64,000 nt of DNA from IMG/VR virus record IMGVR_UViG_3300042473_001265, positions 1 to 64,000 of that record; one strand, 5' to 3'. This document shows, piece by piece, positions 8,160 through 64,000 of this stretch. The translations under genes and the position numbers were made by a program. Under the pieces are notes generated by a model. That model was not told where the DNA came from. It was given only the letters and a program-made list of their open reading frames with translations, and ran no database searches. The number at the start of each line of letters is the position of its first letter. Within the stretch, counting starts at the first letter, position 1.

Positions 8160-8868
8160 CTGTGTAGACGTTTACCAGTACGGGTCTATAGATCGCATCA
8201 GTCCCGAAGCGCCGGTGCCGGTGTTCAAGCTTCTTTACGAACTGTCACGCCCCGGCATGGCCGGCAATGTCAATGACAATTTGATAGCACTGGGTTGCAA
8301 TGTAAAGTACATCACAGACGGCCCGCCCAGTACCAAAACCAGATTGATCGATGCACGAAGCAAACAGCACATTGTTAGAATAGACAACGATACACAATCA
8401 TCAGGCATACAAGCCGGATCATGGCCCGTGGGCATCAACAACTACGATGCCATTGTGATTTCGGACTACAACAAAGGCTTTGTAAGTTACGAAGCAATTG
8501 AATGGGTACGCAAAGAGTTTCGTGGCCCGATCTTTGTTGATACAAAAAAAACTGAGTTGGCAAGATTGGAAGGATGCATTGTAAAAATCAACGCACTGGA
8601 ACACAGTTTGTTGAAATCCGAATGCAGTGAACTGATTGTGACCAGCGGCAAAGACGGCGCAAAATACAAAGGAAACAGTTATCAAACACCACTGGTCGAA
8701 GTGACAGATGTGTGTGGTGCCGGTGATACCTTTTTGTCTGCACTGGTTGTAGAATTTTTAAATACAGGCTGCATGAAGAAATCCATAGATTTTGCCAATC
8801 GGGCAGCAGCCGTCACTGTGCAACACACCGGTGTGTATGCACCAACACTAGAGGAAATTCAATGTTGA
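8110..8868 (+). CDS. PfkB-family heptose-7-phosphate kinase-like protein (HldA/RfaE domain I)
   Basis: RISPEAPVPV, GMAGNV, ISDYNKG, VTDVCGAGDTF. Confidence 0.85.
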   Translation: MATPQQKKFNILLLGDDCVDVYQYGSIDRISPEAPVPVFKLLYELSRPGMAGNVNDNLIALGCNVKYITDGPPSTKTRLIDARSKQHIVRIDNDTQSSGIQAGSWPVGINNYDAIVISDYNKGFVSYEAIEWVRKEFRGPIFVDTKKTELARLEGCIVKINALEHSLLKSECSELIVTSGKDGAKYKGNSYQTPLVEVTDVCGAGDTFLSALVVEFLNTGCMKKSIDFANRAAAVTVQHTGVYAPTLEEIQC

Positions 8869-9221
8869 GATTAGAAGGTTTTGTAGAAAAAGGCTGGGGT
8901 TCAGAACTGATATGGGCCACCACGGACAAGTACTGCGGCAAGCTGTTGAAATTCAACAAGGATGCCAAATTCAGCATGCACTTTCATGCAGAAAAAGATG
9001 AGTCGTGGTATGTGCTGGATGGAAAGTTTGTTGTCAAGTTTATTGAAACACGCGATGCCAGCCAGCACGAAACAGAACTGACAGCAGGCTGCGTCTGGCG
9101 CAATAGACCATTGCAACCGCACCAGGTGATCTGTTTGGAAGCCGGAACCATCATTGAAGTAAGCACTGCCGACAGTATAGCAGACAATTACCGTGTGGGC
9201 AAGGGTGACAGCCAAAAATGA
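8862..9221 (+). CDS. Cupin, sugar-isomerase-like
   Basis: VEKGWGSE...SMHFHAEKDESWYV...PHQ...EVST. Confidence 0.7.
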   Translation: MLRLEGFVEKGWGSELIWATTDKYCGKLLKFNKDAKFSMHFHAEKDESWYVLDGKFVVKFIETRDASQHETELTAGCVWRNRPLQPHQVICLEAGTIIEVSTADSIADNYRVGKGDSQK

Positions 9222-9700
9222 GAACAGTATATTTAGATATGGATGATGTAATTGCAGACTTCAACGCCTATGCAATCAGTGTGTTGCGTAAAAAACAAGA
9301 TGACGAACGCTGGGAACACAAGGAGTGGACACGACTACGGGATAATCCACGTCTGTATAGAGACTTAGATAAAACAGCAGAAGCGGACACTATTGTTACG
9401 GCTTGCAAAGAAAAATGCAAATCCAATAATTGGAATTTGATGTTTTTAACAGCAGTACCCAAAGGCAATGATGTTAAGTGGGCCTTCTATGATAAAGTGC
9501 ATTGGGCCACCATTCACTACCCGGATATTCCTGTAATGTTTGGACCATATAGTCATGATAAACATGTGCATTGTAACCCAGGTGATGTTTTAATTGACGA
9601 CCGTACCAGCAACTGTGAAGAATGGCAGAATGCTGGTGGTGTTGCTATACAACATCGTGGAGACATTGACAAAACATTACAAGAAATTTTAAATTTATGA
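9218..9700 (+). CDS. HAD phosphatase, 5'(3')-deoxyribonucleotidase-like
   Basis: YLDMDDVIADF, FLTA, K, LIDDR motifs. Confidence 0.75.
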   Translation: MRTVYLDMDDVIADFNAYAISVLRKKQDDERWEHKEWTRLRDNPRLYRDLDKTAEADTIVTACKEKCKSNNWNLMFLTAVPKGNDVKWAFYDKVHWATIHYPDIPVMFGPYSHDKHVHCNPGDVLIDDRTSNCEEWQNAGGVAIQHRGDIDKTLQEILNL

Positions 9701-10473
9701 AAATTTTACTTACAGGTCATAAAGGTTTTATTGGCAGTCACATGTTGACTGCGTTAAAAAACGCAAATCACGAAGTGACCACATACGACTGGAACGACGG
9801 TGCCAGACCCGGTGTGATCGATCAAGATTGGGTCATACACCTGGGTGCCATCAGCAGTACCACAGAGCGTGATGTTGACCGAGTACTGCGTCAGAACTAT
9901 GAATTTTCTGCGGAACTGTTTGACGAATGCAAACGATTTGGTGTGAACTTTCAGTACGCCAGTTCGGCCAGTGTGTATGGCCTGATCAGTGACTTTGCTG
10001 AACACAGTCCAGTTGATCCCAAAACTCCTTACGCCTGGAGCAAGTATTTGTTTGAGCGACATCATGCCCGACATCAAGGTGGCAACACAGCACAAGGGTT
10101 CCGCTATTTCAATGTGTACGGATCTCAAGGTGAAGACCACAAAGGCAATCAGGCCAGTCCGCACAGCCAGTTTCGGCGACAGGCCGAAACCACTGGCACT
10201 ATCAAGGTGTTTGAAAACAGTGAATTGTATCATCGAGACTTTGTGCATGTGAGCAAGATCGTTGACACACACCTGCGGTTCATGTCAATTCCTGAAAGTG
10301 GCATATGGAATGTGGGCACTGGTAAGCCACAGAGTTTTATGGAGGTGGCGAAACAATACGGAGTGCCGATCACCACTGTGCCCATGCCGGATATACTTAA
10401 AGATTCATATCAAAAGTACACCTGTGCTGACATGACCAAATACAATGCCACACTGAAAAAATATTCAGTTTGA
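9697..10473 (+). CDS. hldD: ADP-L-glycero-D-manno-heptose 6-epimerase-like NAD-dependent epimerase
   Basis: TGHKGFIGS, GAISSTTE, YASSASVYG, YAWSK, FRYFNVYG..EDHKG.QAS. Confidence 0.8.
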   Translation: MKILLTGHKGFIGSHMLTALKNANHEVTTYDWNDGARPGVIDQDWVIHLGAISSTTERDVDRVLRQNYEFSAELFDECKRFGVNFQYASSASVYGLISDFAEHSPVDPKTPYAWSKYLFERHHARHQGGNTAQGFRYFNVYGSQGEDHKGNQASPHSQFRRQAETTGTIKVFENSELYHRDFVHVSKIVDTHLRFMSIPESGIWNVGTGKPQSFMEVAKQYGVPITTVPMPDILKDSYQKYTCADMTKYNATLKKYSV

Positions 10474-10499
10474 ATTTGGTCACTGTGTCAAGATAAATT

Positions 10500-10760
10500 A
10501 TGTCCATGTCAACCGCTGTTGCAAAACGATCTAAAACTTTCAGTTTCGAACTGCGAGCAGCTGAGAGTTTTCAACACACCCGAAAAATTTCCAAACCGTT
10601 TGGGGCGCTGGACTCTGTGATCAACTGGTGTAAAAGCGAATGCACCGGTGAGTGGCGCTGGGAATTGGTAACAGTCAGTTCGGATATAAGTCCGGGACAA
10701 TATATTTTTTACTTTGATTCAGATCGCGATTGTGCAGCATTTTCGCTGCAATGGTGTTAG
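10500..10760 (+). CDS. Small protein, F-x-L-x-W family
   Basis: Ends FYFDSDRDCAAFSLQWC. Confidence 0.65.
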   Translation: MSMSTAVAKRSKTFSFELRAAESFQHTRKISKPFGALDSVINWCKSECTGEWRWELVTVSSDISPGQYIFYFDSDRDCAAFSLQWC

Positions 10761-22441: not shown

Positions 22442-23151
22442 TGTTTAATCTGTCAGATAAAAAAATAGTAAGTTTTGGTGACAGTTTTGTGTTCGGATCC
22501 GAGCAACAACACAACAATGATGGGTCGTTGGGATGGATTGGCAGAGCTGCAACTAGACTAGGTGTTGCGTACAAAACATTTTCTATTCCCGGGTGTGGCA
22601 ACGATCATATTGCTCGACAGATATATTCATATGTTGCAAATAATCCGGTGGAGGACACACTGGCAGTAATTAATTGGACCTGGTGTAGCCGATGGGACTT
22701 TTACATTGGACAAGCCGAAACATGGATTACACTGGGCCCAACTTGTGTTCCGGAAAAACTAAAAGATCTTGTATCACACACGCAGGCAGAAGACATGATA
22801 GATTTTTATAAACATCGTGCTAACAGTAGTATTCTGTGGAACAAGTTTAGAAACTTACAGACCATATTTGCTGTGCAATCATATTTAAAAAGTAAAAATA
22901 TCAACAGTATACAAACATATATGGATTATATGATGTTTGACCAAGAATATGATATTCATTCTCCTGACTATGTAAAAGAATTACAAGCATTGGTCAAACC
23001 AAACTTAGAACTGTTTGAAGGTCAAAATTTTATTGACTGGAGTTATAACAAGGGATTTGAGGTTACCAAAGTTGGCCTGCATCCGCTTGAAGATGCACAT
23101 ATTGCAGCTTGTGAGTTGTGGATAGATAGATATGCACAAGCGTTGGACTAA
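22441..23151 (+). CDS. SGNH-like protein (paralog of 41141)
   Basis: FGDSFVFG, PGCGN, INWT..SR, HPLEDAH. Confidence 0.65.
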   Translation: MFNLSDKKIVSFGDSFVFGSEQQHNNDGSLGWIGRAATRLGVAYKTFSIPGCGNDHIARQIYSYVANNPVEDTLAVINWTWCSRWDFYIGQAETWITLGPTCVPEKLKDLVSHTQAEDMIDFYKHRANSSILWNKFRNLQTIFAVQSYLKSKNINSIQTYMDYMMFDQEYDIHSPDYVKELQALVKPNLELFEGQNFIDWSYNKGFEVTKVGLHPLEDAHIAACELWIDRYAQALD

Positions 23152-23159
23152 ATATTGGC

Positions 23160-37680: not shown

Positions 37681-37879
37681 AGTGTTTCTCCAAAGTTGAG
37701 GATTTTTAGAATAACAGCAACATGCTGTCACAAGTATTTAGGCATTAACTACAGGAATTCTAGTGGTATTGATATTTGAAATCCACAGCATAAGTATTAG
37801 ACTTGGCTGGTCGTTCACTGTTGACAATTGCTGTGTGTTTTGCTATAATTAACGCATATGATAACAACCGGGATTGACA

Positions 37880-39942: not shown

Positions 39943-40000
39943 GTCACTGTTCAATTTGGTGAGTTTTTGGTTACAGTGCGGAATTTGACTAAATAACAGT

Positions 40001-47658: not shown

Positions 47659-47924
47659 AATATCTATTATTACTATCAGTAGTACTATTACAGGCCTGTG
47701 GCACAACAGTGCCAGTCTCTGCAAAATTTCCCGACGCCCCGGGCGCGATTGCAACACAAACATGCCCTGCATTACAGCAACTACCGCAGGATCCCAAACT
47801 AAGCGAAGTATCTAAAACAATCACCATCAACTATACCACATACTATGAATGTGCAGTCAAAGTCGATGCCTGGAATGATTGGTATAAAATACAAAAAAAT
47901 ATTTTTGAAAAGGCAGCAAAATGA
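47655..47924 (+). CDS. Putative outer-membrane spanin lipoprotein (Rz1-like)
   Basis: Lipobox LQAC; Pro-rich; follows the Rz-like gene. Confidence 0.65.
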   Translation: MKYLLLLSVVLLQACGTTVPVSAKFPDAPGAIATQTCPALQQLPQDPKLSEVSKTITINYTTYYECAVKVDAWNDWYKIQKNIFEKAAK

Positions 47925-48418
47925 GTGAAGAACTAAAAAGCGCAAGCGAAACAAAAAAAGAAGACTGGATGAACTCAAAATGGCGTCCAGCCATGGGTTG
48001 GATGTACATGCTGACCTGTGTGACTGACTTTGTAATATTCCCAATTCTGTGGAGCCTGCTGCAGACCTTACTCAAACAACCTGTTACTCAGTGGAGTCCA
48101 TTGACACTGCAAGGTGCAGGACTATTTCACCTGGCCATGGGCGCGGTGCTAGGGGTTGCTGCATATGGTCGTACACAAGAAAAACTTGGTGGAGCCAACA
48201 ATGGCGGAATACAAACACCACCAACAGGCTTTTCGCCTGGGCTTACAACAACCAGCACACCATCAACAGGATTTGGTGCCACTACTGGGGGCTTTGGCCC
48301 TCATGCACCCAGCACAAGTTTTGCACCAGCCCCTAGCTGGGGTACAACTCCGGTCTCAACAGCACCATCACAGACATTTGGATCTGGGCCGGCGCCTGCA
48401 CAAAAACCTGAACTTTAA
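47921..48418 (+). CDS. Putative holin (3TM/GTA-holin-like)
   Basis: WRPAMGWMY...TM...LGVAAYGRTQEK. Confidence 0.6.
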   Translation: MSEELKSASETKKEDWMNSKWRPAMGWMYMLTCVTDFVIFPILWSLLQTLLKQPVTQWSPLTLQGAGLFHLAMGAVLGVAAYGRTQEKLGGANNGGIQTPPTGFSPGLTTTSTPSTGFGATTGGFGPHAPSTSFAPAPSWGTTPVSTAPSQTFGSGPAPAQKPEL

Positions 48419-48554: not shown

Positions 48555-48755
48555 ATGAAAACATTATTAACATTAGTATTAGCCTCGGCATTTGCAATGC
48601 CAGTTATGGCAGCAGACGAAGCACCAAAAACTAAATTTGTATGCAAAGAAGTCAAAGACAGCAAGACAGGCAAATTTAAAAAACAATGTAAACAAATTAA
48701 GATACACAAAAAATACGAAGGCACTGCTGTTCCTGACAAAAAGTCTAAAAAGTAA
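48555..48755 (+). CDS. Small secreted basic protein
   Basis: Sec signal peptide; Cys pair. Confidence 0.65.
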   Translation: MKTLLTLVLASAFAMPVMAADEAPKTKFVCKEVKDSKTGKFKKQCKQIKIHKKYEGTAVPDKKSKK

Positions 48756-49655: not shown

Positions 49656-51929
49656 ATGCAAAATAATCCAGAAATCGATGCTGTAGTCAACAACGCCACT
49701 GCCATTGCTGTGGGACACAAACACGGATATGTGCTGACAGAACATGTGCTGCTGGCCATGGTACAGTATCCATCGTTCCGCAAAATACTAGAAAAATACG
49801 GAACACCAGTTGAACAACTAGAATCTGAATTGCACAACTACCTGCAGAGTCAAACCAGCCTGTTGACAGACCGCACAGATCCCCCACGCAAAACCAATGC
49901 ACTGGAGCGAGTGTTTAATCGGGCGCTGACACAGGTACTGTTCACGGGCCGTAGAACAATTACCTTGTTGGACTTGTATTTGGCCATGATGTCTGAAACC
50001 AACAGCCATGCACATTACTACTTGTTGAAGTATAATGTTCGCAAAACAGAATTTGCTGAATTCTTCCAAAAGAATTACAACATCACTGATGTGGAATTGA
50101 CCAGCGCCAAGGCCGACGAAATTCTTGAAGAACACTGTGTCAATTTGAGTCGCAGAGCAGCCGAAGGTCAACTTGAACCCATGATTGGGCGCACAGCCGA
50201 ACTGGAAGAAATGATCACTGTGCTGGCCCGCAAGTTCAAGGCCAATGTGCTGATGGTGGGCGATCCGGGTGTGGGCAAAACTGCCATCATTGACGGACTG
50301 GCACAAGAAATTCATGCTGGCTCTGTGCCAGAGTTTCTCAAAGGTGCAGAAGTTTGGGGACTGGAAATTGGATCCCTGTTGGCTGGCAGCAAGTATCGCG
50401 GCGAGTTTGAAGAAAAGTTCAAAGATGTTATCACAGCATTGAAAACCAAGAAGAACTGTGTGCTGTTCATTGACGAAGCACACACCATGATGGGTGCGGG
50501 TGCCAGTGGATCCAGCAGTCTGGACTTTGCCAACATGATCAAACCGGCCATCACCAGTGGCAACTTGAAAGTGATTGCCAGTACCACCTGGGAAGAATAC
50601 TACGAATCATTCGAGCGTGATCGTGCGCTAATGCGCCGTTTTCACAGAGTCACCATTGGTGAGCCGGATGCTGCCACCACTGAGCAGATCCTGATTGGCA
50701 TCAGCCCTAGACTGGAATCATTCCACAATGTGATGATTGACACAGACGCCATGTGTGCAGCAGTGGAACTGAGTGGACGCTACATACACGATCGTAAGAA
50801 TCCTGACAAGTCAATTGATCTGCTGGACGGTGCCTGTGCTGCACAGCGAGTGTTGGATCAAGGCACAGTCACAGTGAACAAACACATGATCATGGCACAG
50901 GTCAGCCGTGTGACCAGTATTCCACTGGACCGCTTGCAAAACGAACGCAGTATCAAAATTACCGAACTTGAAAGCAATGTCAAACAATTCCTGTACGGGC
51001 AGGATGCAGCAATTGACACTGTGCTGGAACGAGTGTACATCAACTTCTCTGGCATTGGCAATCCCAAAAAGCCGGTGGCCAGCTTTTTGTTCCTGGGTCC
51101 AACTGGCACAGGCAAAACAGAATTGGCCAAGCTGCTGGCAGAGAATCTTGACATGCACCTGCTGAAATATGACATGAGCGAGTTTCAGGAAAAGCACAGC
51201 ATTGCCAGCTTGATTGGTGCACCGCCGGGCTATGTGGGCTTTGATGACGGCAATGTGGGCGGCGGCAAATTGATCAGTGACATATCCAAGAACCCATTCA
51301 GTGTGCTGCTGTTTGATGAAATTGAAAAGGCACATCCTGACGTGGTCAACATCATGTTGCAGATGCTGGACGAAGCCAAAATTACTGGCAGCAGTGGCAA
51401 ATCAGTTGATGTTAAAAACTGCATCATCATCATGACCAGTAATTTAGGTGCCAGAGACAATGAAAACAACAACATTGGCTTTGGCAAATCGTTGGAAAAA
51501 TACGGCGAAGAAGATCGTGCAATGAAAGACTTCTTCAAGCCGGAACTGCGTAACCGCATTGATGCTGTGTGCAAGTTCAACAAGTTGGATCCATTGGCCA
51601 TCAAGAAAGTTGTGGTCAAGTTCACACGAGAACTACAGCAGAGCCTGTACGCCAAGAACATCAAGCTGATGTTTGATGAAAGTGTTATCAACATGCTGTC
51701 GGAAAAAGGATACGATCCCAAGATGGGTGCTAGACCGCTGAGTCGCAAGATTGACGAACTGATTCGTGTTCCGCTCAGCAAGCGCATACTGTTTGATCAG
51801 ATCAAAGACTGTTCTATATTGGCCATCATGGTTGCTGACGAGCTGATGTTTGTGACCAAACCGCTGACTGGTCCCCTGCCAATTGTGGACGGAAAAGGAT
51901 ATATTTTACTCGATGCCCCTGCTGTCTGA
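49656..51929 (+). CDS. clpA: ClpA-like AAA+ unfoldase
   Basis: Clp N domain, GDPGVGKT, GPTGTGKT, DMSEF.EKH, IGF loop; no ClpB middle domain. Confidence 0.88.
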   Translation: MQNNPEIDAVVNNATAIAVGHKHGYVLTEHVLLAMVQYPSFRKILEKYGTPVEQLESELHNYLQSQTSLLTDRTDPPRKTNALERVFNRALTQVLFTGRRTITLLDLYLAMMSETNSHAHYYLLKYNVRKTEFAEFFQKNYNITDVELTSAKADEILEEHCVNLSRRAAEGQLEPMIGRTAELEEMITVLARKFKANVLMVGDPGVGKTAIIDGLAQEIHAGSVPEFLKGAEVWGLEIGSLLAGSKYRGEFEEKFKDVITALKTKKNCVLFIDEAHTMMGAGASGSSSLDFANMIKPAITSGNLKVIASTTWEEYYESFERDRALMRRFHRVTIGEPDAATTEQILIGISPRLESFHNVMIDTDAMCAAVELSGRYIHDRKNPDKSIDLLDGACAAQRVLDQGTVTVNKHMIMAQVSRVTSIPLDRLQNERSIKITELESNVKQFLYGQDAAIDTVLERVYINFSGIGNPKKPVASFLFLGPTGTGKTELAKLLAENLDMHLLKYDMSEFQEKHSIASLIGAPPGYVGFDDGNVGGGKLISDISKNPFSVLLFDEIEKAHPDVVNIMLQMLDEAKITGSSGKSVDVKNCIIIMTSNLGARDNENNNIGFGKSLEKYGEEDRAMKDFFKPELRNRIDAVCKFNKLDPLAIKKVVVKFTRELQQSLYAKNIKLMFDESVINMLSEKGYDPKMGARPLSRKIDELIRVPLSKRILFDQIKDCSILAIMVADELMFVTKPLTGPLPIVDGKGYILLDAPAV

Positions 51930-56217: not shown

Positions 56218-56227
56218 CCATTTGCGC

Positions 56228-56233
56228 TAAATA
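56228..56233 (+). promoter_or_regulatory. Late-type promoter motif TAAATA (representative copy)
   Basis: Same motif precedes many structural and lysis genes (20665, 23149, 24054, 30852, 39990, 46528, 53563); resembles T4 TATAAATA. Confidence 0.65.
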
Positions 56234-56240
56234 TTACATA

Positions 56241-59200
56241 ATGAATATTCTTGAACTTGATTCCTACAATTTGGCCGACGCTGTTAAGTTTAACCAGCGT
56301 TTGAATCCGCGTCTGTGGGACAACAACGAACAGTTACGGCCCGAAGTGCATGATCATTTGCTGCAAATAGCTGATGATTTCCGCGAGTTTTTAGGAGTAA
56401 GCGGATACGATCTCAAAGATATAACCATCAGCGGATCCAATGCTGCGTACACATACACTCCCAATTCTGACATCGATCTACACCTGGTGGTTGATTTGCC
56501 CGAAGCTGACAACAGCGAAGTGTATCGCGAACTGTTTGATGCTAAAAAGTTTCAATACAACCAACAGCACAACATCACCATTGGCAGTCATCCTGTGGAA
56601 CTGTATGTACAAGATGCTAATAAAACACATGTGAGTCAAGGCATTTACAGTGTGTTGAACAATCAATGGATTGATGTGCCCAAGCGTAGAGATGCTGGAG
56701 TAGATGACATATCCACTCGCAGCAAATACGAAGATTTGGCTGCACGAATTGATAGTGCTGTTGCATCTGGTGATCATGATGACATGGCCAAATTGATGAG
56801 CAAAATCAAAGCCATGCGACAAGCCGGACTGAATCAGCATGGCGAGTTTGGTGCAGATAATCTAGCATTCAAAATGCTGCGCAACCAAGGCGCTATCAAA
56901 CGATTGATTGACGCTAGAAACGCTGCCAGAGACCGGGAGTTGAGCCTGCGTGAGCGTGAAATAGTTGTTAAACGACCATTCACATACGGATTCAAAACTG
57001 AAGATGTCAGCAGCAATCCCAGTGGTGTGAGCCCCGAAACAAAAATGTTCTTAAGCGAAAAGCCCGCAGCCAGTGTCGTTGACATTGTGTCATCGTTCAT
57101 TGATTACTGTGTGGAGCAGTTGGGCATTGAGCAACCGCCTCAAGTGAAGTTCAAGAAGGATCCGCAGTGGAGCGCTCGTAACAAAACTTTTGGCCGTTAC
57201 AATTCTGACCATAATCTATTGGAAGTGAGCCTAGCTGGACGCCATGTGATGGACATATTGCGCACAGTGGCACATGAACTCACCCACACCAGACAACACG
57301 AAATAGAAACAGTGCCAGACACTGCCGGCGCCACTGGTAGCCGATGGGAAAATCAAGCCAACGCCCAGGCCGGTGTGCTGATGCGTGACTATGCCGAACA
57401 GCATCCGGAGTTTTTCAACGATGACGGGTTAGAAGAAGGTATCCGGGACAAGTTAGCCACGGCTGCATTGGCAGCATGTGTTGCTGGTTCACCAGGCTGC
57501 GCCACAACCACTCCGATCAACACTGGCGCTGACGCTGTGAAGGCTGCTGTGCGAGCCAGCCAATTGACTCGTGCTGGGTTGGAACACGGAGCAAAACAAG
57601 AACTTAAGAATGTGCTGCGCCGTGGTGCAAATGCCAATGAAAGTTCTGGTTATATTCCAACAAAAAAACAAGCTAGAGATCCACGCTTTAGCATGGCTCT
57701 TACAAAAGATGTACAACCTGGTGCCACAGGTCGAGAAGCCAACAAATTAAACCTTCGCACAGACACGCAAGGCAAGCCGGCACTGTTGATGAAGACTGCC
57801 AACCTGCGTGAAGATCGCATGCAGCGGCAACGGACTGACCCCACATACAATGTGGCTGAAGATGACTTGTCCGAAGTTGATCGCCGGGCTGCGTTAAAAG
57901 CGTTGGGTGCAGGCGCAATGGCTGCTGCGGTACCGGGCGTGGCCAAAGCCGGACCTTTTGTGGATGTTGCTGCCCTAGGAAACACCAATCCTGACCAGTT
58001 CAACAAAGTATGGGTGCCCAGGTACAAAGAACTCACTACTCGATGCCAAGACATCCTGCGCCAATTGATTGCAGCAGCAGGCCCCAAATGGGCGCCGCTG
58101 TTGAAAGGCACTACCATTCGTGTAGTCTCAAGTGAAAATTATGCACAGGCCAGTGCAATTTCGCGCACCATCACTATTGATCTTTCGGTGTTCTGGGATG
58201 CTCCAGATGCGGCCTTGGCATTTACCATAGCACATGAGCTGGGACACATTGCCCTGGAACATGCCACTGGTACCGATGATGCGTCAGCGGACTACAAGAC
58301 TCAAGTACGAGTGGCTGCACAGTATCGGCAAGGCGAACTAGACGCAGACGAGTTCGCAGTGCGCCTGTGCAAGACACTGGGCTACAACAAGGCCGAAGTA
58401 TTCAAATTCATTGCCAAGAACGAAGCAGAATTGCAACTGTTGGATGTTCTGACACAGTCACCTACCAGCAGTCACCCCAGCCAAAAGACACGAATTGAAC
58501 GAGCCAGGATGAATGGGTTTCAGTTGAGCCGGGGCGGCATCGAACAGATGAATGTGTTGAAGCAACACCTGGCCGAAGATGACACTGAACACCGTGATAT
58601 AGTCAACCGCCTGAGTCGTGAACTGAAACTGTATGAAGATCAGGACCTGTTTGAAATCAACATGAGTCCCACAAATCTAAAGAAACTGGCAGCACAAACA
58701 GGCGCCATGGCTGGCATGGAATTTGAGATGATTGTGCCCGGTGCTGATGGCGGCGACGATGCTGCGGATATGGAACCCGACTACGACGCCGACGAAAATG
58801 TCATGAGCATCGAAGATGCAGCGCAGTTCTTTTTTGACGGTGACTTCAACGGTCGAAGAGACATTCAACGCCTGCGTGACAGCATGAGCGAAGATTATCA
58901 GACATGGCTAGGCGATGCATGGATGGAGTATTTTGAAACCTACAAAAACACCATTGTGTTTAGATACGGCAAAGAAAATTGGTCAGAGGCAGACATTGCT
59001 GAAATATTGGGCCTGGACGAAGCCGCAGCAGAAGCGTTGGAAAATCGTGGAGCAAGCCCTGAAGATTACATGGACGCTGCCGAAAAAGTCATTGAAGACG
59101 GTTTGGATCCCTGGCTGAATGATGCGCAGGAAGATGCACAAGAAGACTATTACAATGATGATCATGAAGAGGATTGGCTGAGAAGTGAAGGCATTCGCTC

Positions 59201-60584
59201 AATGAGCGATGTTTCGAGTCAGTACGATATTTCCTGGCCCTATTGGAGCACTCCTGGCAGCGAAGGCGCCAGCATTGAAGAAGTTGCTGATGAATTCCGT
59301 GAGGCCATTGGTCGCAAGGTAAACTGGTCTGCCAACTATCATGGTGGCCGCCGCGAACCCGATGCTTATGTGGTTGAGCCTGACGGCAGCCTGGAACCAG
59401 ATGACAGCAACGATTCTGGACTGGAGTTTGTGAGCCCGCCCTTGCCTGTTGACGACATGATTAGTGATCTAAACAAGGTCCGGGCCTGGGCCAAACAACG
59501 AGGCTGCTACACCAATGATTCAACCGGCCTGCACATCAATGTGAGTGTGCCGGGCTTTGACAACGACAAACTGGACTATGTTAAACTAGCTCTGCTGCTG
59601 GGTGACCAGTATGTGCTGGATCAATTTGGACGCACCGGCAACACCTATGCCAAAAGCGCCATGGGCATGATCAAAGAGCGAATCGCTCAGCGTCCCGAAG
59701 ATGCTGCTGCCATGTTGCAAAAAATGAAAACAGGCCTGGGCGAACTGGCCACCAAAGTTATACACAGCGGCACGACCAGCAAGTATACCAGTATCAATAC
59801 CAAGACTGGATACATTGAGTTTCGCAGTCCCGGCGGCGATTGGCTAAATGAAAACTTTGACAAGATTGAAACCACGCTGTTGAGATTTGTAGTGGCATTA
59901 GATGCTGCCATGGATCCGGCAAAGTATCGCGACGAATACCTGAAGAAGCTGTACACTGTACTCAAGCCTAAAGACCAAAATGATACCTTGAGTTATTTTG
60001 CTAAATTTGCTGCTGGTGAATTGCCCAAGGCTGCACTAAAGAGTTTTATCAAACAAGCACAACTGGAACGCAACAAGGTCAAAGATACCTATGCTGAACT
60101 CACGCCCGGACAAAGCAACTACAAGATCTATCAAATCTCTGATGGTAGAACAGTGGGCACATTCTATGCTGCTGATCAAGCACAGGCCAATGCTGAATTC
60201 ACTGACTGGTTGATGAGTCCCGAAGCTGGCGGCAGAGATGACTTTAGATACGCACCAATTGACACACCAATTCAAGGTCCTGTGGCCACAACACCTGTGC
60301 CCGGCGTCATTGACATTGAGCCAGATGTAGAACAGAACTTTGTTCCTGGTAGCACCCTGGATCTGCAACGCCAACGTCAACAAGCAGCACAGCAATCTGC
60401 CGCTAGTGGAACATTTAGAGGCACATGGGCAATCAAAGACAGCCAAGGCAATACACTACACACCTTCAGCGGCATTGGCAATTCACAAGCAGATGCCAAC
60501 AGAGTTGCAGCAGGATGGCTGGCTCGTGCAGGATACCAAGATGGTATCGAAGTTGCGGTTGTGCCAGTCATGGAGCCGTCGTGA
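56241..60584 (+). CDS. Multidomain polyprotein-like protein (1447 aa): Pol-beta-type nucleotidyltransferase, HExxH zincin, Tat-like signal plus M48-like peptidase, amidoligase
   Basis: SGSNA...SDIDLH; AHELTH; DRRAALK...AKA; AHELGH...ELDAD...SHP...RI; GMEFE...EPDGSL...GLEFVSPP...TGLHINVS...IEFRS. Confidence 0.8.
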   Translation: MNILELDSYNLADAVKFNQRLNPRLWDNNEQLRPEVHDHLLQIADDFREFLGVSGYDLKDITISGSNAAYTYTPNSDIDLHLVVDLPEADNSEVYRELFDAKKFQYNQQHNITIGSHPVELYVQDANKTHVSQGIYSVLNNQWIDVPKRRDAGVDDISTRSKYEDLAARIDSAVASGDHDDMAKLMSKIKAMRQAGLNQHGEFGADNLAFKMLRNQGAIKRLIDARNAARDRELSLREREIVVKRPFTYGFKTEDVSSNPSGVSPETKMFLSEKPAASVVDIVSSFIDYCVEQLGIEQPPQVKFKKDPQWSARNKTFGRYNSDHNLLEVSLAGRHVMDILRTVAHELTHTRQHEIETVPDTAGATGSRWENQANAQAGVLMRDYAEQHPEFFNDDGLEEGIRDKLATAALAACVAGSPGCATTTPINTGADAVKAAVRASQLTRAGLEHGAKQELKNVLRRGANANESSGYIPTKKQARDPRFSMALTKDVQPGATGREANKLNLRTDTQGKPALLMKTANLREDRMQRQRTDPTYNVAEDDLSEVDRRAALKALGAGAMAAAVPGVAKAGPFVDVAALGNTNPDQFNKVWVPRYKELTTRCQDILRQLIAAAGPKWAPLLKGTTIRVVSSENYAQASAISRTITIDLSVFWDAPDAALAFTIAHELGHIALEHATGTDDASADYKTQVRVAAQYRQGELDADEFAVRLCKTLGYNKAEVFKFIAKNEAELQLLDVLTQSPTSSHPSQKTRIERARMNGFQLSRGGIEQMNVLKQHLAEDDTEHRDIVNRLSRELKLYEDQDLFEINMSPTNLKKLAAQTGAMAGMEFEMIVPGADGGDDAADMEPDYDADENVMSIEDAAQFFFDGDFNGRRDIQRLRDSMSEDYQTWLGDAWMEYFETYKNTIVFRYGKENWSEADIAEILGLDEAAAEALENRGASPEDYMDAAEKVIEDGLDPWLNDAQEDAQEDYYNDDHEEDWLRSEGIRSMSDVSSQYDISWPYWSTPGSEGASIEEVADEFREAIGRKVNWSANYHGGRREPDAYVVEPDGSLEPDDSNDSGLEFVSPPLPVDDMISDLNKVRAWAKQRGCYTNDSTGLHINVSVPGFDNDKLDYVKLALLLGDQYVLDQFGRTGNTYAKSAMGMIKERIAQRPEDAAAMLQKMKTGLGELATKVIHSGTTSKYTSINTKTGYIEFRSPGGDWLNENFDKIETTLLRFVVALDAAMDPAKYRDEYLKKLYTVLKPKDQNDTLSYFAKFAAGELPKAALKSFIKQAQLERNKVKDTYAELTPGQSNYKIYQISDGRTVGTFYAADQAQANAEFTDWLMSPEAGGRDDFRYAPIDTPIQGPVATTPVPGVIDIEPDVEQNFVPGSTLDLQRQRQQAAQQSAASGTFRGTWAIKDSQGNTLHTFSGIGNSQADANRVAAGWLARAGYQDGIEVAVVPVMEPS

Positions 60585-61468
60585 GAGCACTAGAATTTTT
60601 ACACGAAGACGAACCAGCAAGAATCAAGATTGGTGGTGCTGAAGCAGCAGCCCGGGCACGAACCTGGATTGAAAAGGTGTATGCCCGTTATCCGCAAACC
60701 ATGCAGAACAATCATGTGATGACCTGGGGCTCGGGAGATGACCAACAGTTTGCAATGTTTGAATTAACTCCTAGCTTCAGCCGGCGTGGCGCAGTTGAAG
60801 TCAAATGGTTTCAAGCGTATCCGCTACGGTCTGGGGTGGGCAGTCGTGCTATGAAAGAACTGCAAGCCATGGCCCGAGAAGATGGAATCAGCCTTACATT
60901 ATTCCCCTGGGACAAAGGACAAGTAAGCCAAAGTAAACTGACCAAATTCTACCGAGGACAAGGCTTTTCTCCAACTGTCAAAGGTGGCAAAGCAATGCAA
61001 TGGAGCCCCGAGCTGGCGGAAGAACTCAGAGTTGATGTACCCAACGAAGAATGGCTTGACGATGCTATTGCGTATGCCAAGCAAAAAAGTCCCGACCGCA
61101 ACGGGTTGCCCTACATGGGCAAGACCACTGCTACTGTTAGACCTGAACCAATGGTATCCATGGATATACTCAAGCGACTACCGGGCATGCGAAACGAACA
61201 GCAAAATGTACGACAAGCGGATCTAGCAGCCATTATGAAAATAATGAAAGACACTGGCAAATTGCCACTGCATAGTTTTACTAATGAAGAATACAAGCCT
61301 TTTATCAATGTGGCCTACGATGGCAGTGCTTGGGTCAACGAAGGTAATCATCGTATCATGGCTGCTGCTGCCCTGGGTTGGAAAGAACTGCCTGTGCAAA
61401 TCAGTTACTTTGATGGCGGCGAACGAGTTGAATCTGGACCCATGTACCCAGGAAAGATTGGACTATGA
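60581..61468 (+). CDS. GNAT-like plus ParB-like two-domain protein
   Basis: GTG start after GGAG; R.GVGS.AM...L.KFY..QGF; NEGNHRIMAA..LG. Confidence 0.7.
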   Translation: MRALEFLHEDEPARIKIGGAEAAARARTWIEKVYARYPQTMQNNHVMTWGSGDDQQFAMFELTPSFSRRGAVEVKWFQAYPLRSGVGSRAMKELQAMAREDGISLTLFPWDKGQVSQSKLTKFYRGQGFSPTVKGGKAMQWSPELAEELRVDVPNEEWLDDAIAYAKQKSPDRNGLPYMGKTTATVRPEPMVSMDILKRLPGMRNEQQNVRQADLAAIMKIMKDTGKLPLHSFTNEEYKPFINVAYDGSAWVNEGNHRIMAAAALGWKELPVQISYFDGGERVESGPMYPGKIGL

Positions 61469-61923
61469 GAGCCAGTGAACTTTTAAACGAAGTAGTTGAT
61501 CTTGACACAGCATTTCCACTAAAGTGGGATCAGCAGTTTGCAGCTCAAGGTGAAATTCATGCGTCGGCCACAGATGCTGACGGCAGAGAAATTGGCATAT
61601 CGTTTACTCCTGCAGGCAATGGTGAAGTAACTGATGTAGCATTTACTCGCGGCGGAACACATGAAATGACTGGGCGTGGTGATGCAGGACGAGTAATGGC
61701 CACTGTGATCAACGCTATCAACACCTATGCAAAAAAATATAAACCACCGTATCTAGCGTTCAGTGCCAAGTCTGGTGGCGGCAGATCCAGTGCATACACC
61801 GCAATGATTCGGCGCCATGCACAGGGATATGAACTAGTGCCCACCGATAAATACCCAGCGGCCTTGAACAACTATCTTGAGTTCATTGGCAGCGATCAAC
61901 CATTTGTGCTGGCAAGAACATGA
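61465..61923 (+). CDS. Putative internal head protein
   Basis: N-terminus MRASELLNE. Confidence 0.6.
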   Translation: MRASELLNEVVDLDTAFPLKWDQQFAAQGEIHASATDADGREIGISFTPAGNGEVTDVAFTRGGTHEMTGRGDAGRVMATVINAINTYAKKYKPPYLAFSAKSGGGRSSAYTAMIRRHAQGYELVPTDKYPAALNNYLEFIGSDQPFVLART

Positions 61924-62705
61924 AAACAAAAGAATTTACCACAGAAGGCTGGAGCCAAAAATACAAAAAAAGTATCAATTGCAGTCATCCCAAGGGCTTT
62001 AGTCAGCGGGCCCATTGCGCTGGAAAGAAGAAGCAAAACGAAAGCGCAGAAATGGAAATGGTGTGTGAAATGTGTGGCCTGTGTGAAACACACGGCGATC
62101 ATTCACAGGACAACTTGGATGAAGCATGCTGGGACACACACAAACAAGTTGGTATGAAGAAAAAAAGCAACAAAATGGTTCCCAACTGTGTGCCTAAAAA
62201 CGAAGAAAAGGAGACCGCAATGACAGAAAATCAAGATGAATTGGCAAGAATACTGGAACTCAGCACAGGAGTAAGTGCAACAGATCGCGTGGAACTAAAC
62301 GAAGAGTTTGATCTAATAGAGTCTATCATTGACAGTCTTGCAGATCGCAATGGGGTAGATGCAGAGACAATATGGGAAGACCTCGACTCACTGACAGATG
62401 ATGAGTTGTATGTGTTTGCAGTGACTACGCCAATCATGGAAGATTGGCAAAAGGCCAACAAAAAGGATCGTACTGCCGGCATGAGTCAGAAAGCTGTCAA
62501 CGCTTATCGCAGAGAAAATCCCGGGTCCAAACTAAAGACTGCTGTAACTACCAAGCCCAGCAAATTAAAGAAAGGTTCGAAGGCGTCGAAACGTCGTAAG
62601 AGCTATTGCAGCCGCAGCCGTGGTCAAATGAAAATGCACAGCATCAGCTGTGCTAAAACTCCGGACAAGGCCATATGCAAAGCACGCCGTAGATGGAACT
62701 GCTGA
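61920..62705 (+). CDS. Putative internal head polyprotein of small Cys/Lys-rich modules
   Basis: MKTKEFTTE; basic modules separated by LDE, LNE and IME linkers. Confidence 0.65.
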   Translation: MKTKEFTTEGWSQKYKKSINCSHPKGFSQRAHCAGKKKQNESAEMEMVCEMCGLCETHGDHSQDNLDEACWDTHKQVGMKKKSNKMVPNCVPKNEEKETAMTENQDELARILELSTGVSATDRVELNEEFDLIESIIDSLADRNGVDAETIWEDLDSLTDDELYVFAVTTPIMEDWQKANKKDRTAGMSQKAVNAYRRENPGSKLKTAVTTKPSKLKKGSKASKRRKSYCSRSRGQMKMHSISCAKTPDKAICKARRRWNC

Positions 62706-62706
62706 C

Positions 62707-62994
62707 ATGAGACTGTATGAATTTGCATTCGGTTCCGGCGTGGACGTCAATGAAAATCTTCGCGACTGGTTCAAAGATAAATGGGTACGCTTTGGTCCCG
62801 ATGGTAAGATACGCGGCGACTGTGCTAGAGGGTCAGAATCTGAAGGCAAGCCCAAGTGTTTGCCACAGTCCAAAGCACATGCACTGGGCAAGAAAGGTCG
62901 TGCAAGTGCAGCAGCCAGAAAACGCAGACAAGATCCCGACGCCAATCGTTCAGGCCCAGCAATAAATGTCAGTACAAAAGGAAAGAAAAAATGA
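62707..62994 (+). CDS. Small basic putative internal head protein
   Basis: MRLYEF...VNE|NLRDWFKDKWV...C.R...PKCLP. Confidence 0.65.
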   Translation: MRLYEFAFGSGVDVNENLRDWFKDKWVRFGPDGKIRGDCARGSESEGKPKCLPQSKAHALGKKGRASAAARKRRQDPDANRSGPAINVSTKGKKK

Positions 62995-64000
62995 ACATAA
63001 ATGATATCATTACAGAATCACAACAAAAATGTCCGCACTGTGGTGGACCTGTGGTGGAATATTCAGAACTAGGCGAGGGCAAAAAAGATGCCTGCTACTA
63101 CAAGGTCAAGGCATCGGCCAAAGTATGGCCCAGTGCCTATGCATCCGGTCGATTAGTTCAGTGTCGCAAAAAAGGTGCTGCCAACTATGGCAACAAGTCA
63201 GAAGGTGTGGCGGAAGGCTTATTAAACGAATTCGCACCAGGTGGAGCTGAAGGTGCTGGACCATATGCATATGGTATAGCTCTAAAAGAAATGGCAAAAT
63301 TGTATGCTGAAGGTGAGTTTGATTTAGTTGACGTCAGCGGCATGGACACAACAAGTCAAAACCAAAGTGATGCCGAAGAAATAAACAGCGTAGCAGATGC
63401 TTTTATCAATCGTGGAATGGAAGCTGGTAGAGAAGCATACCGCATGGTTGACACCATGGTGCAAGAGGACATGGATGAATACCTTGACGGCCAAGGATTC
63501 AATGTTGATGCTGATATCCATGTTGCATACAAAAATGACGTTGACCGTTATAATGCTTCTCCAGAGGGTCAGGCAGGAATCGCTGCGCATGAGGCTCGAC
63601 GAGAAGCCTGGCGGCGGTCAAAGCCGGCCAACCAAGTGATAATACAAGCAATTGATCCCAAAGGCAATTTGCCCATTGACAACACTCGCGTAGTGTTTGA
63701 TGCTAGAGAGTTTAACCTTGAGCCTGGCTTTCTTAAATACTCAATTGAACAAGATATTAAAAAGATCAAAAAGACAGCACCCGGTAGCTTGATTCAAATC
63801 ACCTTGGGCGGCAAACCAACTGATATTCAGGGTATTCTTGACCAATATAAACAGCTCAGCAAGGGGCCACACGATGTGGCGGAAAACTTTGCTGATGGGC
63901 GAAATCCCCAAGACAAGGGCGATGCCAAGCGTCACGGTATCAACACCAAGGCCAGTGTAAGCAGTCTACGCAAAACTGCCAAGCAAGGTGGACGCAAGGG
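62991..64000 (+). CDS. Putative internal head polyprotein, truncated at the window end
   Basis: Read manually: MNINDIITE|SQQKCPHCGG...LGE|GKKDACYYKVK...GVAE|GLLNE|FAP...DVAE|NFADG; open to the window end. Confidence 0.75.
   Translation, partial: MNINDIITESQQKCPHCGGPVVEYSELGEGKKDACYYKVKASAKVWPSAYASGRLVQCRKKGAANYGNKSEGVAEGLLNEFAPGGAEGAGPYAYGIALKEMAKLYAEGEFDLVDVSGMDTTSQNQSDAEEINSVADAFINRGMEAGREAYRMVDTMVQEDMDEYLDGQGFNVDADIHVAYKNDVDRYNASPEGQAGIAAHEARREAWRRSKPANQVIIQAIDPKGNLPIDNTRVVFDAREFNLEPGFLKYSIEQDIKKIKKTAPGSLIQITLGGKPTDIQGILDQYKQLSKGPHDVAENFADGRNPQDKGDAKRHGINTKASVSSLRKTAKQGGRK

What the first reader, a model, noticed from the sequence alone, without database searches (positions are those of the whole stretch)
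57861..58577. Twin-arginine signal peptide buried mid-protein behind a putative cleavage site, ahead of an M48-like peptidase
Seen in sequence: about 545 residues into the 1447-aa protein the sequence reads DDLSE|VDRRAALKALGAGAMAAAVPGVAKA|GP. This has RR..LK, a Gly/Ala h-region and an AxA signal-peptidase site. It is followed by an M48-type peptidase (AHELGH, ELDAD, SHP..RI) that ends at another linker (HLAE). Established: signal peptides normally act at N-termini, and M48 peptidases such as BepA/LoiP act in the envelope. Inference: cleavage after LSE would unmask the signal, so a virion-delivered protease could be exported by the host Tat system, for example for superinfection exclusion or envelope remodelling. 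An alternative is internal initiation at the in-frame TTG 57867 (MSEVDRR), although no clear RBS is seen.
Basis: partly seen in the sequence, partly recalled or inferred. Interest (0 to 1): 0.85.

Follow-up and report, generated by a model that had tools for sequence, protein, structure and literature searches.

The report
Hidden export signal in phage polyprotein
A 1447-residue jumbo-phage protein has a conserved twin-arginine export signal in its middle, directly after a T4-type head-protease cut site, which suggests that a piece of this probably injected protein is sent on by the host's own export machinery into the cell envelope.

Summary
Residues 546-570 of the ORF at 56241-60584 form a twin-arginine signal: RR, a 15-residue Gly/Ala core, then AKA|G. 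An M48-type zinc peptidase follows and ends at HLAE779.

The signal is not a relic. Every homologue carrying this peptidase keeps it. Its codons are under purifying selection. In six related giant proteins it passes the curated Tat model, although the window's own copy scores just below.

Free-standing versions of the same gene read: T4-like capsid-targeting leader (MRAxEFIxE), Tat signal, peptidase. In the giant proteins, nearly every internal signal-like segment (Tat, lipobox or Sec type) lies just after an [L/I/V]-x-E motif, the cleavage motif of the T4 prohead protease gp21. These segments precede envelope-acting modules: the M48 peptidase, or LysM plus a GH19 lysozyme-like domain.

The gene also heads a tandem array of genes with T4 IP-like leaders. 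A homologue of its core module is a mass-spectrometry-confirmed virion protein in phage Atu_ph07.

Best reading: this is a head-packaged polyprotein cut by the prohead protease, which exposes export signals that act after ejection into the next host. Cleavage, packaging and Tat export are all inferred, not shown. I found no prior description.

The parts
56241..60584 (+). Giant multi-module ORF, 1447 aa: a polyvalent, internal-protein-like polyprotein
   Evidence: More than 1000 metagenomic relatives of 900-2000 aa share the core but have swapped middle modules.
56241..56255 (+). N-terminal leader MNILE, with an I-x-E motif. Putative short propeptide or capsid-targeting leader.
   Evidence: ILE, ITE and similar are kept in 11 of 12 aligned giants. 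The NTase homology starts only at residue 9.
56265..56945 (+). Nucleotidyltransferase-like module (aa 9-235)
   Evidence: phrog_36119 E 1.5e-45. Pfam NTP_transf_2 is sub-threshold. Free-standing homologues occur in T4-like cyanophages and Maribacter phages.
57165..57311 (+). SprT-like zincin module (aa 309-357), with HELTH at 57273-57287
   Evidence: Pfam SprT-like scores 17 bits, below its cutoff of 25.6. The HExxH is read directly from the sequence.
57429..57479 (+). Junction L397-E-E399, then a lipoprotein-signal-like segment G400-C413 with lipobox L-A-A-C
   Evidence: The segment is conserved in at least 20 giants and is always preceded by [LIV]-x-E and a K/R.
57867..57875 (+). L543-S-E545: predicted T4-type prohead-protease site (L/I-X-E, cut after E). 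The TTG at 57867 is the Leu codon.
   Evidence: Conserved in 14 of 14 giants. Motif definition from PMC9026906. In L013 the same linker is followed by a different module, so this site is a cassette boundary.
57876..57950 (+). Twin-arginine signal-like segment V546-A570. RR at 57882-57887; predicted signal-peptidase cut AKA570|G571.
   Evidence: TIGR01409 12.5-13.2 bits and PF10518 14.7 bits, both below cutoff. Six other giants score 18.3-22.3 bits against the cutoff of 16.7. Purifying selection. pLDDT below 50, so not part of the fold.
57951..58577 (+). M48-like zinc peptidase module G571-E779. HELGH at 58233-58247, third ligand E699 at 58335-58337, H745-P746 at 58473-58478. It ends at L777-A-E779.
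   Evidence: Pfam M48 43.6 bits against cutoff 20.3. H, E, H and E are invariant in 40 homologues. The profile hits BepA at 1.5e-5 and the M48 structure 3c37 at 1.7e-5. Foldseek hits to 3c37, minigluzincins, ZMPSTE24 and BepA are weak.
58647..58655 (+). L803-F-E805: predicted cleavage site ahead of the amidoligase core
   Evidence: Conserved in 14 of 14 giants. The free-standing Atu_ph07 and RsoM2USA homologues start with a leader ending in L-T/S-E, followed by the same [LI]-[KN]-M.
59265..59840 (+). Amidoligase_2 core module (aa 1009-1200)
   Evidence: Pfam PF12224 33.7 bits against cutoff 22. This is the part shared by the whole giant family.
60581..64000 (+). Tandem array of at least five genes with T4 IP-like leaders. 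Starts: 60581 (GTG overlapping the giant's TGA), 61465, 61920, 62707, 62991.
   Evidence: The leaders resemble T4 ipII/ipIII (MKTYQEFIAE) and ipI. The leader pattern hits 4 genes here and none elsewhere in the window on either strand.

Best explanation
The ORF is a head-packaged polyprotein of a roughly 340 kb jumbo phage of the T4 superfamily. It was built by end-to-end fusion of internal-protein (IP) cassettes. Each cassette boundary keeps a T4-type prohead-protease site, [L/I/V]-x-E with the cut after E.

The segment V546-A570 is the Tat signal peptide that belongs to the M48-like peptidase cassette. In free-standing versions the gene reads: capsid-targeting leader, Tat signal, peptidase.

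Proposed sequence of events:
1. During head maturation the gp21-family protease cuts after E545 and E779. This releases a 234-residue fragment whose first residues are V-D-R-R.
2. On the next infection the fragment is ejected with the DNA into the cytoplasm.
3. The host Tat system recognises it and exports it.
4. Signal peptidase trims it at AKA570|G571, giving a periplasmic zinc peptidase of about 23 kDa. Its target is unknown; BepA-like action on envelope proteins is a guess.

Shown here: the motifs, their conservation and selection, the repeated arrangement of cut site, signal and envelope-acting enzyme, the cassette boundaries, the array of leader-bearing genes, and virion association of a homologous module in a cultured relative. 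Inferred: packaging of this protein, cleavage at these sites, ejection, Tat export, and periplasmic activity.
For: 1. Conservation. All M48-bearing giants keep RR, the hydrophobic core and AxA at positions ranging from 134 to 626. pN is 0.14-0.24 against pS 0.62-0.68 in the 30 signal codons. Six giants' internal segments pass the TIGR01409 cutoff.

2. Free-standing homologues. Among the 92 representatives, many proteins of 200-290 aa start with MRAxEFIxE, then S/T/D-RR-x-F-L-K, a hydrophobic core, AxA and the peptidase. TIGR01409 scores 19.3-25.8 bits in them. Signal-less homologues join the leader directly to the same G-[QP]-[FY] mature start.

3. Repeated pattern. Forty of 42 internal uncharged hydrophobic segments in 120 giants have [LIV]-x-E and a K/R within 16 residues upstream. 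The expectation at random positions is 8.9%. Three signal types occur: lipobox, Tat and Sec-like. A different Tat-like signal (P0061) and Sec-like signals (P0047, P0090) precede GH19 or LysM+GH19 modules.

4. T4-type logic. T4 IP leaders were fetched for comparison. The L/I-X-E motif and the capsid-targeting concept come from PMC9026906. A leader-gene array follows the giant ORF, and similar arrays occur in L215, L224 and L225. The free-standing gene P0141 lies next to a T4 gp13 homologue.

5. Protease present in the lineage. PA5oct gp152 matches Peptidase_S77 at E 5e-24 inside a T4-like head module, and the PA5oct virion protein gp150 starts MKINDIITE. Two related contigs of 349 kb and 286 kb carry both a giant homologue and a gp21 homologue.

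6. Virion association. Atu_ph07 CDS196 is 35% identical to aa 1001-1249 (E 3e-26). It is a virion protein with 14 peptides and 30% coverage, lies two genes from the portal, and gp21 is CDS204.
Against: - The window's own signal scores below both curated Tat models. Ala replaces the usual Phe or other hydrophobic residue after RR-x.
- No gp21 homologue lies in the 64 kb window, and I could not read the rest of the contig.
- Several free-standing homologues have the leader but no signal, so the peptidase does not strictly need export.
- One context (L215) encodes a leaderless Tat-M48 and a leaderless Sec-signal nuclease, showing that ordinary secretion from the infected cell also occurs in this gene pool.
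- After cleavage only 2-4 residues would precede RR. This is short, although the leaderless homologue P0185 starts M-D-R-R.
- The host is unknown, so the presence of a Tat system is assumed.
- All homologues of the peptidase module are metagenomic. None is in a cultured phage, so no proteomic check is possible.
Confidence: 0.6

Rival explanations
1. The signals work in the producing cell, not after ejection. The polyprotein would be cut in the infected cell's cytoplasm, for example by its own SprT-like zincin module, as proposed for polyvalent proteins. The M48 fragment would then be exported by Tat in that same cell, late in infection, for lysis control or superinfection exclusion. In free-standing genes the 'leader' would simply be the n-region of an ordinary Tat signal.
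For: Iyer et al. 2017 predict autoprocessing of polyvalent proteins by their metallopeptidase domains. A HELTH zincin module is present at aa 345-349. Tat signals tolerate long n-regions, so leader plus RR at positions 8-19 could work uncut. L215 shows leaderless secreted versions.
Against: The same leader is on many proteins with no signal at all: 245 of 261 distinct leader-bearing ORFs. It matches the T4 IP capsid-targeting leaders. The junction motif is the gp21 motif. Free-standing genes lack the zincin module yet keep L-x-E. The core-module homologue is in Atu_ph07 virions. The SprT-like hit is below threshold.
Confidence: 0.15
2. The hydrophobic segments are membrane-insertion elements of ejection proteins, not export signals. 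After release from the capsid the fragments would insert into the inner membrane to help DNA entry or to anchor the enzymes.
For: Ejection proteins of other phages (T7 gp14-16, P22 gp7/16/20) enter the envelope (abstracts listed). The segments lie at fragment N-termini.
Against: The segments are short and rich in Ala and Gly: 8-21 uncharged residues with mean hydropathy 0.7-1.8. They carry pathway-specific marks: the RR-x-F-L-K consensus passing the Tat HMM, L-A-A-C lipoboxes, and AxA cut sites whose +1 residue matches the mature start of signal-less homologues. A plain membrane anchor needs none of these.
Confidence: 0.1
3. It is an inert relic. A secreted M48 peptidase gene was captured with its signal and fused in frame, and the buried signal has no function.
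For: The window's copy scores below the Tat HMM cutoffs. Signal-less homologues exist.
Against: There is purifying selection on the signal codons at near-saturated synonymous divergence. RR, the core and AxA are retained in all 17 M48-bearing giants found. Other signal types independently recur at other junctions. Bacterial genomes hold only distant catalytic-core relatives, so there was no recent capture.
Confidence: 0.08
4. Internal translation initiation at TTG 57867 (or nearby) makes a separate secreted peptidase starting M-S-E-V-D-R-R.
For: The TTG is in frame, and the 82%-identical homologue L004 also has TTG there. Only about 40% of genes in the window have a Shine-Dalgarno-like motif, so its absence is weak evidence.
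Against: There is no Shine-Dalgarno motif or promoter-like feature upstream. P0035 has Ile at this position. The L-x-E motif explains conservation of the Leu, and the same motif precedes every other internal signal, where no start codon is required.
Confidence: 0.05

Closest known systems
T4 internal proteins (IPI, IPII, IPIII, Alt) with capsid-targeting sequences removed by prohead protease gp21
   Same: Short N-terminal leaders of the MK-T-x-x-E-F-x-x-E type. Cleavage after Glu in L/I-X-E. Hypervariable tandem loci. Delivery with the DNA. Sources; window genes at 60581-64000.
   Different: T4 IPs are small single-domain proteins that act in the cytoplasm. Here cassettes are fused into a 1447-residue polyprotein with internal cut sites, and some cassettes expose a host export signal after the cut. 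I found no report of an export signal behind a capsid-targeting leader.
Polyvalent proteins of phages and conjugative elements (Iyer, Burroughs, Anand, de Souza, Aravind 2017, PMC5512222)
   Same: Very large multi-domain proteins of phages. Mix-and-match enzymatic modules, including a zincin metallopeptidase. Predicted to be injected and processed into units.
   Different: That paper proposes autoprocessing by the zincin domain. It does not mention signal peptides, the periplasm or twin-arginine motifs anywhere. Here the junction motif points to the prohead protease, and some units are predicted to leave the cytoplasm.
M48 zinc peptidases of the bacterial envelope (BepA/YfgC, LoiP, YcaL, HtpX) and the minimal M48 structure 3c37
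   Same: HExxH, a Glu third ligand in E-x-x-A-D, and a C-terminal H-P-x(4)-R motif. Passes the Pfam M48 threshold. The profile hits BepA and 3c37 at about 1.5e-5. An envelope location is predicted.
   Different: It is a minimal catalytic domain of about 209 residues with no TPR or membrane part. Identity is only about 15-19% and TM-scores are 0.3-0.47. The family is phage-specific. The substrate is unknown. It also resembles the HExxH region of the E. coli Lit (U49) protease.
Bacterial Tat signal peptides (TIGR01409 / PF10518)
   Same: The S/T/D-R-R-x-[F/V/A]-L-K motif, a weakly hydrophobic Gly/Ala core and an AxA cut site. Homologues pass the curated cutoff.
   Different: It lies 545 residues inside the primary translation product, so it can only work after proteolysis. 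The cargo would arrive by ejection from a virion rather than from a ribosome. The window's own copy is below cutoff.

Membership tests
Tat (twin-arginine) signal peptide | Consecutive RR within an S/T-R-R-x-F-L-K-like motif | tested here: met
   D-R-R-A-A-L-K at residues 547-553. RR is present in 31 of 40 aligned homologues.
Tat (twin-arginine) signal peptide | Score above the curated HMM cutoff (TIGR01409 16.7 bits; PF10518 22.7 bits) | tested here: not met
   The window copy scores 12.5-13.2 and 14.7 bits. Six other giants score 18.3-22.3 and free-standing homologues 19.3-25.8 bits on TIGR01409.
Tat (twin-arginine) signal peptide | Uncharged, weakly hydrophobic core followed by a small-x-small signal-peptidase site | tested here: met
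   A 15-residue core with mean hydropathy 1.59, then A-K-A|G. The +1 Gly matches the first mature residue of signal-less homologues.
Tat (twin-arginine) signal peptide | Located at the N-terminus of the polypeptide | tested here: not met
   It starts at residue 546 of 1447. It would become N-terminal only after the predicted cut at E545.
Tat (twin-arginine) signal peptide | Export depends on TatABC and on the RR pair | not testable with these tools
   Needs a reporter assay in wild-type and tatC strains with an RR-to-KK control.
Peptidase family M48 | HExxH plus a downstream Glu zinc ligand (gluzincin) and a Pfam PF01435 score above the gathering threshold | tested here: met
   H665, E666, H669 and E699 are invariant in 40 sequences. 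PF01435 scores 43.6 bits against 20.3.
Peptidase family M48 | M48/minigluzincin fold | tested here: inconclusive
   The AF2 model has pLDDT 79. The best Foldseek hits are all M48 or minigluzincins but weak: E 2e-3 to 0.3, TM 0.3-0.47.
Peptidase family M48 | Proteolytic activity | not testable with these tools
T4-type internal head protein (capsid-targeting leader removed by gp21) | N-terminal leader resembling T4 IP leaders and ending in L/I-X-E | tested here: met
   This holds for the free-standing peptidase homologues and for the five genes downstream. The giant itself has only the short M-N-I-L-E.
T4-type internal head protein (capsid-targeting leader removed by gp21) | A gp21-family (Peptidase_S77) prohead protease in the same genome | tested here: inconclusive
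   None is in the 64 kb window, and the rest of the 340 kb contig could not be read. One is present in PA5oct, in Atu_ph07 as CDS204, and on two related contigs that also carry a giant homologue.
T4-type internal head protein (capsid-targeting leader removed by gp21) | Protein present in virions and cleaved at the motif | not testable with these tools
   Indirect only. Atu_ph07 CDS196, a homologue of aa 1001-1249, is in the virion proteome.
Polyvalent proteins (Iyer et al. 2017) | One phage polypeptide combining several unrelated effector-type domains with a zincin metallopeptidase | tested here: met
   NTase, SprT-like HExxH (below threshold), M48 and Amidoligase_2 lie in one ORF. Homologues swap in GH19, LysM and NUDIX modules.

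The most novel reading that the evidence does not exclude
Jumbo phages of the T4 superfamily use head-maturation proteolysis to arm packaged proteins with N-terminal Tat, Sec or lipoprotein signals. These signals are masked in the precursor. After ejection into a new cell, the host's own export machinery moves the phage enzymes (an M48 peptidase, LysM-GH19 wall hydrolases, lipoproteins) into its envelope. This would be a two-step 'inject, then re-export' delivery route, not described for any phage.
Probability: 0.5. Interest if true: 0.9.

Novelty: new variant of a known kind. Interest (0 to 1): 0.8.

Why it matters
Phage internal or ejected proteins are thought of as cytoplasmic early weapons, such as anti-restriction factors and RNA polymerase modifiers. 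If the model holds, it would show three things:

- Virion cargo can be addressed to the periplasm and outer membrane by borrowing host Tat, Sec and Lol pathways.
- The capsid-targeting leader or cut site doubles as a mask that keeps the signal silent in the producing cell.
- The giant 'polyvalent' proteins of abundant aquatic jumbo phages are cut at defined, predictable sites by the prohead protease.

It also gives a simple sequence rule for finding envelope-directed phage effectors in metagenomes: [L/I/V]-x-E, then 2-4 residues, then a signal peptide. And it makes a directly testable prediction: Tat-dependent export of the V546-start fragment.

Tried and rejected
- gp21 on the window's own contig. 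I tried to find a gp21 homologue on IMGVR_UViG_3300042473_001265. Local tblastn of the PA5oct head module against the window found nothing. Four scans of viral contigs returned lists truncated at 80 loci that did not include this contig. The link could only be made for two related contigs.
- Head genes next to giant genes. Local tblastn against the fetched flanks found none.
- Alignment A1 was too diverse for the bacterial-genome scan. The narrower A3 found only distant catalytic-core relatives.
- CTAAATA as a late-promoter-like motif. There are 8 matches against 5.2 expected, so it is not enriched. I gave it no weight.
- Internal initiation at TTG 57867: considered and judged unlikely.
- Transmembrane-helix reading of the segment: rejected because of its length, its composition and the pathway-specific motifs.
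- The P0061 fragment was cut after its RR by my mistake, so its lack of a hit says nothing.
- Literature searches for any earlier link between capsid-targeting leaders, ejection proteins or the prohead protease on one side and twin-arginine or signal peptides on the other found none. The library lacks most subscription journals.
Full report
**What is there.** The window is the first 64 kb of a 340,172 bp IMG/VR contig, IMGVR_UViG_3300042473_001265 (locus L002). It has 45% G+C and almost all genes lie on the + strand. It encodes a clamp loader, a ClpA/B-like ATPase, a radical-SAM enzyme and an NAD synthetase, among others. The clamp loader is closest to that of Pseudomonas jumbo phage PA5oct (50% identity), followed by Atu_ph07-like and SCTP-2-like phages. 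These are the jumbo branch of the T4 superfamily.

The finding lies in one ORF, 56241-60584, of 1447 aa. Its modules are:
- a nucleotidyltransferase (aa 9-235);
- a SprT-like HExxH (about aa 309-357, below threshold);
- the M48-like peptidase (aa 571-779);
- an Amidoligase_2 core (aa 1009-1200).

**The observation.** L543-S-E545 is followed by V-D-R-R-A-A-L-K, a 15-residue Gly/Ala core, and A-K-A|G-P. After that come HELGH, ELDAD, SHP..R and the end at H-L-A-E779. A strict Tat-like pattern occurs once in the six-frame translation of the whole window, at this site. It appears in 0.07% of shuffles of the protein. The window's copy scores just below the curated Tat models: TIGR01409 12.5-13.2 bits against 16.7, and PF10518 14.7 against 22.7.

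**Homologues: the giant family.** More than 1000 metagenomic proteins of about 900-2000 aa share the N-terminal and amidoligase parts but carry different middle or C-terminal modules, such as M48/U49, GH19 'chitinase', LysM and NUDIX.
- Every member with the M48 module keeps the Tat-like segment, at positions ranging from 134 to 626.
- Six such internal segments pass the TIGR01409 cutoff, at 18.3-22.3 bits.
- In 14 aligned giants, L-x-E is kept 14/14 at positions 522, 543, 777, 797 and 803, 13/14 at 236, and 11/12 at the N-terminal I-L-E. L-x-E motifs inside folded domains are mostly not kept.
- Codon comparison of three divergent DNA copies gives pS 0.62-0.68 and pN 0.14-0.24 for the 30 signal codons. 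This is the same constraint as on the next 45 codons.
- A related giant (L013) keeps the upstream linker ending in D-D-I-V-E but continues with a different module. Another (L155) lacks residues 525-786 cleanly.

So the Tat-plus-peptidase unit is a cassette bounded by the two L-x-E sites.

**Homologues: free-standing genes.** An exhaustive HMMER search with residues 520-800 found 92 representatives. Many are proteins of 200-290 aa whose N-termini read M-R-A-x-E-F-I-x-E (or M-K-I-x-E-I..E). After 2-4 residues come S/T/D-R-R-x-F-L-K, a Gly/Ala core, AxA and the peptidase.
- Twenty-nine of 31 RR-bearing sequences have [LIV]-x-E followed by 2-4 residues before RR.
- They score 19.3-25.8 bits on TIGR01409, except P0135, at 11.9 bits.
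- They end at ..Q-H-L-A, exactly where the giant has H-L-A-E779.
- Homologues without a signal join the leader directly to G-[QP]-[FY].., the same residue that follows AxA in the signal-bearing ones. This supports AKA570|G571 as a real processing site.
- The ESM Atlas places the fragment in an all-viral M48/U49 cluster in which 47% of members carry Pfam TAT_signal.
- Bacterial genomes hold only distant relatives of the catalytic core.

**The leader and the cut site are T4-like.** I fetched the T4 internal-protein genes. ipII and ipIII start M-K-T-Y-Q-E-F-I-A-E|A, and ipI starts M-K-T-F-K-E-F... The review PMC9026906 states two things:
- gp21 cuts after Glu in the short motif L/I-X-E;
- the 10-19-residue IP propeptides are capsid-targeting sequences, which may let T4-like phages package varied proteins.

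In the window, the genes that follow the giant ORF start as listed below. The leader pattern matches four of them and nothing else in 64 kb on either strand.

| Gene start | Leader |
|---|---|
| 60581 (GTG) | (M)-R-A-L-E-F-L-H-E |
| 61465 | M-R-A-S-E-L-L-N-E |
| 61920 | M-K-T-K-E-F-T-T-E |
| 62707 | M-R-L-Y-E-F.. |
| 62991 | M-N-I-N-D-I-I-T-E |

Similar arrays surround the free-standing peptidase genes, and one of these genes lies next to a T4 gp13 homologue.

In PA5oct, gene order around the portal mirrors T4. gp152 is a Peptidase_S77 (gp21 family, E 5e-24). The MS-confirmed virion protein gp150 starts M-K-I-N-D-I-I-T-E.

**The pattern is general.** In the 120 best giant homologues, 40 of 42 internal uncharged hydrophobic segments (17 of 19 distinct variants) have [LIV]-x-E and a K/R within the 16 residues upstream. 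The expectation at random positions is 8.9%.

The segments are of three kinds:
- lipobox type (..L-A-A-C, including G400-C413 of this protein, after L-E-E399);
- Tat type;
- Sec-like.

A second, unrelated Tat-like signal (N-L-E-E|D-I-S-R-R-N-F-V-R.., P0061) precedes a GH19 module. Sec-like ones precede GH19 or LysM+GH19. The modules behind signals are therefore those expected to act on the envelope. The NTase and amidoligase modules have none. Among 261 distinct leader-bearing ORFs in all fetched loci, only a handful carry a signal, as expected if most internal proteins act in the cytoplasm.

- The amidoligase core has free-standing homologues in cultured jumbo phages.
- The Atu_ph07 copy (CDS196, 500 aa) starts with a leader ending in L-T-E followed by L-K-M, like L-F-E805|I-N-M of the giant. 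It lies two genes from the portal, with gp21 at CDS204. It is in the virion proteome at 57.94 kDa, with 14 peptides and 30% coverage (PMC6102473, Supplementary Table S5).
- Two related IMG/VR contigs (349,369 and 286,229 bp) carry both a giant homologue and a gp21 homologue. The homologue on the 349 kb contig is 53% identical to PA5oct gp152.

I could not retrieve the head module of the window's own contig.

**The peptidase.** H665, E666, H669 and E699 are invariant, and A702-D703, P746 and R751 nearly so, in 40 homologues. The AlphaFold model has mean pLDDT 79. The first 25 residues, which are the signal, score below 50 and lie outside the fold. Foldseek and profile searches point only to M48 or minigluzincin structures: 3c37, selecase, ZMPSTE24 and BepA. 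All are weak. NCBIfam also shows weak similarity to Lit and LoiP. It is a minimal M48-like catalytic domain, and its substrate is unknown.

**Mechanism proposed.**
1. The precursor is packaged through its leader or through core interactions.
2. The prohead protease cuts at the conserved L-x-E sites.
3. The fragment V546-E779 now begins V-D-R-R.. This is comparable to the natural N-terminus M-D-R-R of the leaderless homologue P0185.
4. After ejection it is exported by Tat and trimmed at AKA|G.

Tat takes its substrates after translation, which suits a protein that arrives ready-made (established knowledge). The acidic leader or linker may keep the signal silent in the producing cell (inference).

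Rivals are listed separately: processing and export within the producing cell, membrane insertion, an inert relic, and internal initiation at TTG 57867. Internal initiation has no positive support. There is no Shine-Dalgarno motif upstream, one homologue has Ile at that codon, and the L-x-E motif accounts for the Leu.

**Novelty.** The polyvalent-protein paper does not mention signal peptides, the periplasm or twin-arginine motifs. Nor does the jumbo-phage survey. Full-text searches combining capsid-targeting, ejection or prohead-protease terms with twin-arginine or signal-peptide terms found nothing relevant. The library is incomplete.

I rate this a new variant of known kinds (T4 internal proteins and polyvalent proteins), with a mechanism that would be new if confirmed.

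Noticed in passing
window 57429-57479: There is a second masked signal in the same protein. After L-E-E399 comes G-I-R-D-K, a short Ala/Leu core and a canonical lipobox L-A-A-C413. It is conserved in at least 20 giant homologues. The roughly 130-residue module behind it has no Pfam match.
   Followed up: partly
window 60581-64000: A tandem array of at least five genes has T4 IP-like leaders. The first starts at a GTG that overlaps the giant ORF's TGA (GTGA). Gene 61920-62705 has a DUF6321 C-terminus and is Cys- and Lys-rich. Their functions are unknown.
   Followed up: partly
window 48555-48755: A small ORF (66 aa) with a classical Sec signal (..A-M-P-V-M-A-A|D-E) and a very basic mature part lies just downstream of a holin-like gene (47921-48418, phrog_3427). 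It may be a lysis-cassette or secreted accessory protein.
   Followed up: no
window 56227-56233, 23148-23154, 39989-39995, 37735-37741 (-): CTAAATA lies 4-14 nt upstream of several start codons, including that of the giant ORF. This is reminiscent of T4-type late promoters. The motif is not enriched overall (8 found, 5.2 expected).
   Followed up: partly
window 49656-51929: A 757-aa ClpA/B-like double AAA+ ATPase (phrog_4871, E 8e-232) is encoded a few kb upstream of the internal-protein array.
   Followed up: no
locus L215 (Logan ERR2848492 contig), 8426-10609: In a related gene array, a staphylococcal-nuclease-like protein with an ordinary N-terminal Sec signal and a Tat-M48 homologue starting M-D-R-R lack the leader, whereas their neighbours have it. 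Leaderless secreted versions therefore coexist with leader-bearing ones.
   Followed up: partly
locus L202 (IMGVR_UViG_3300033073_000243): A free-standing 228-aa gene reads M-K-V-S-E-I-I-L-E-Q-E-L-D-E|G-W-K-D followed by an Ala/Gly hydrophobic core. This is the same leader-plus-Sec-like-signal arrangement as at the GH19 junctions of the giants. Its domain was not identified.
   Followed up: no
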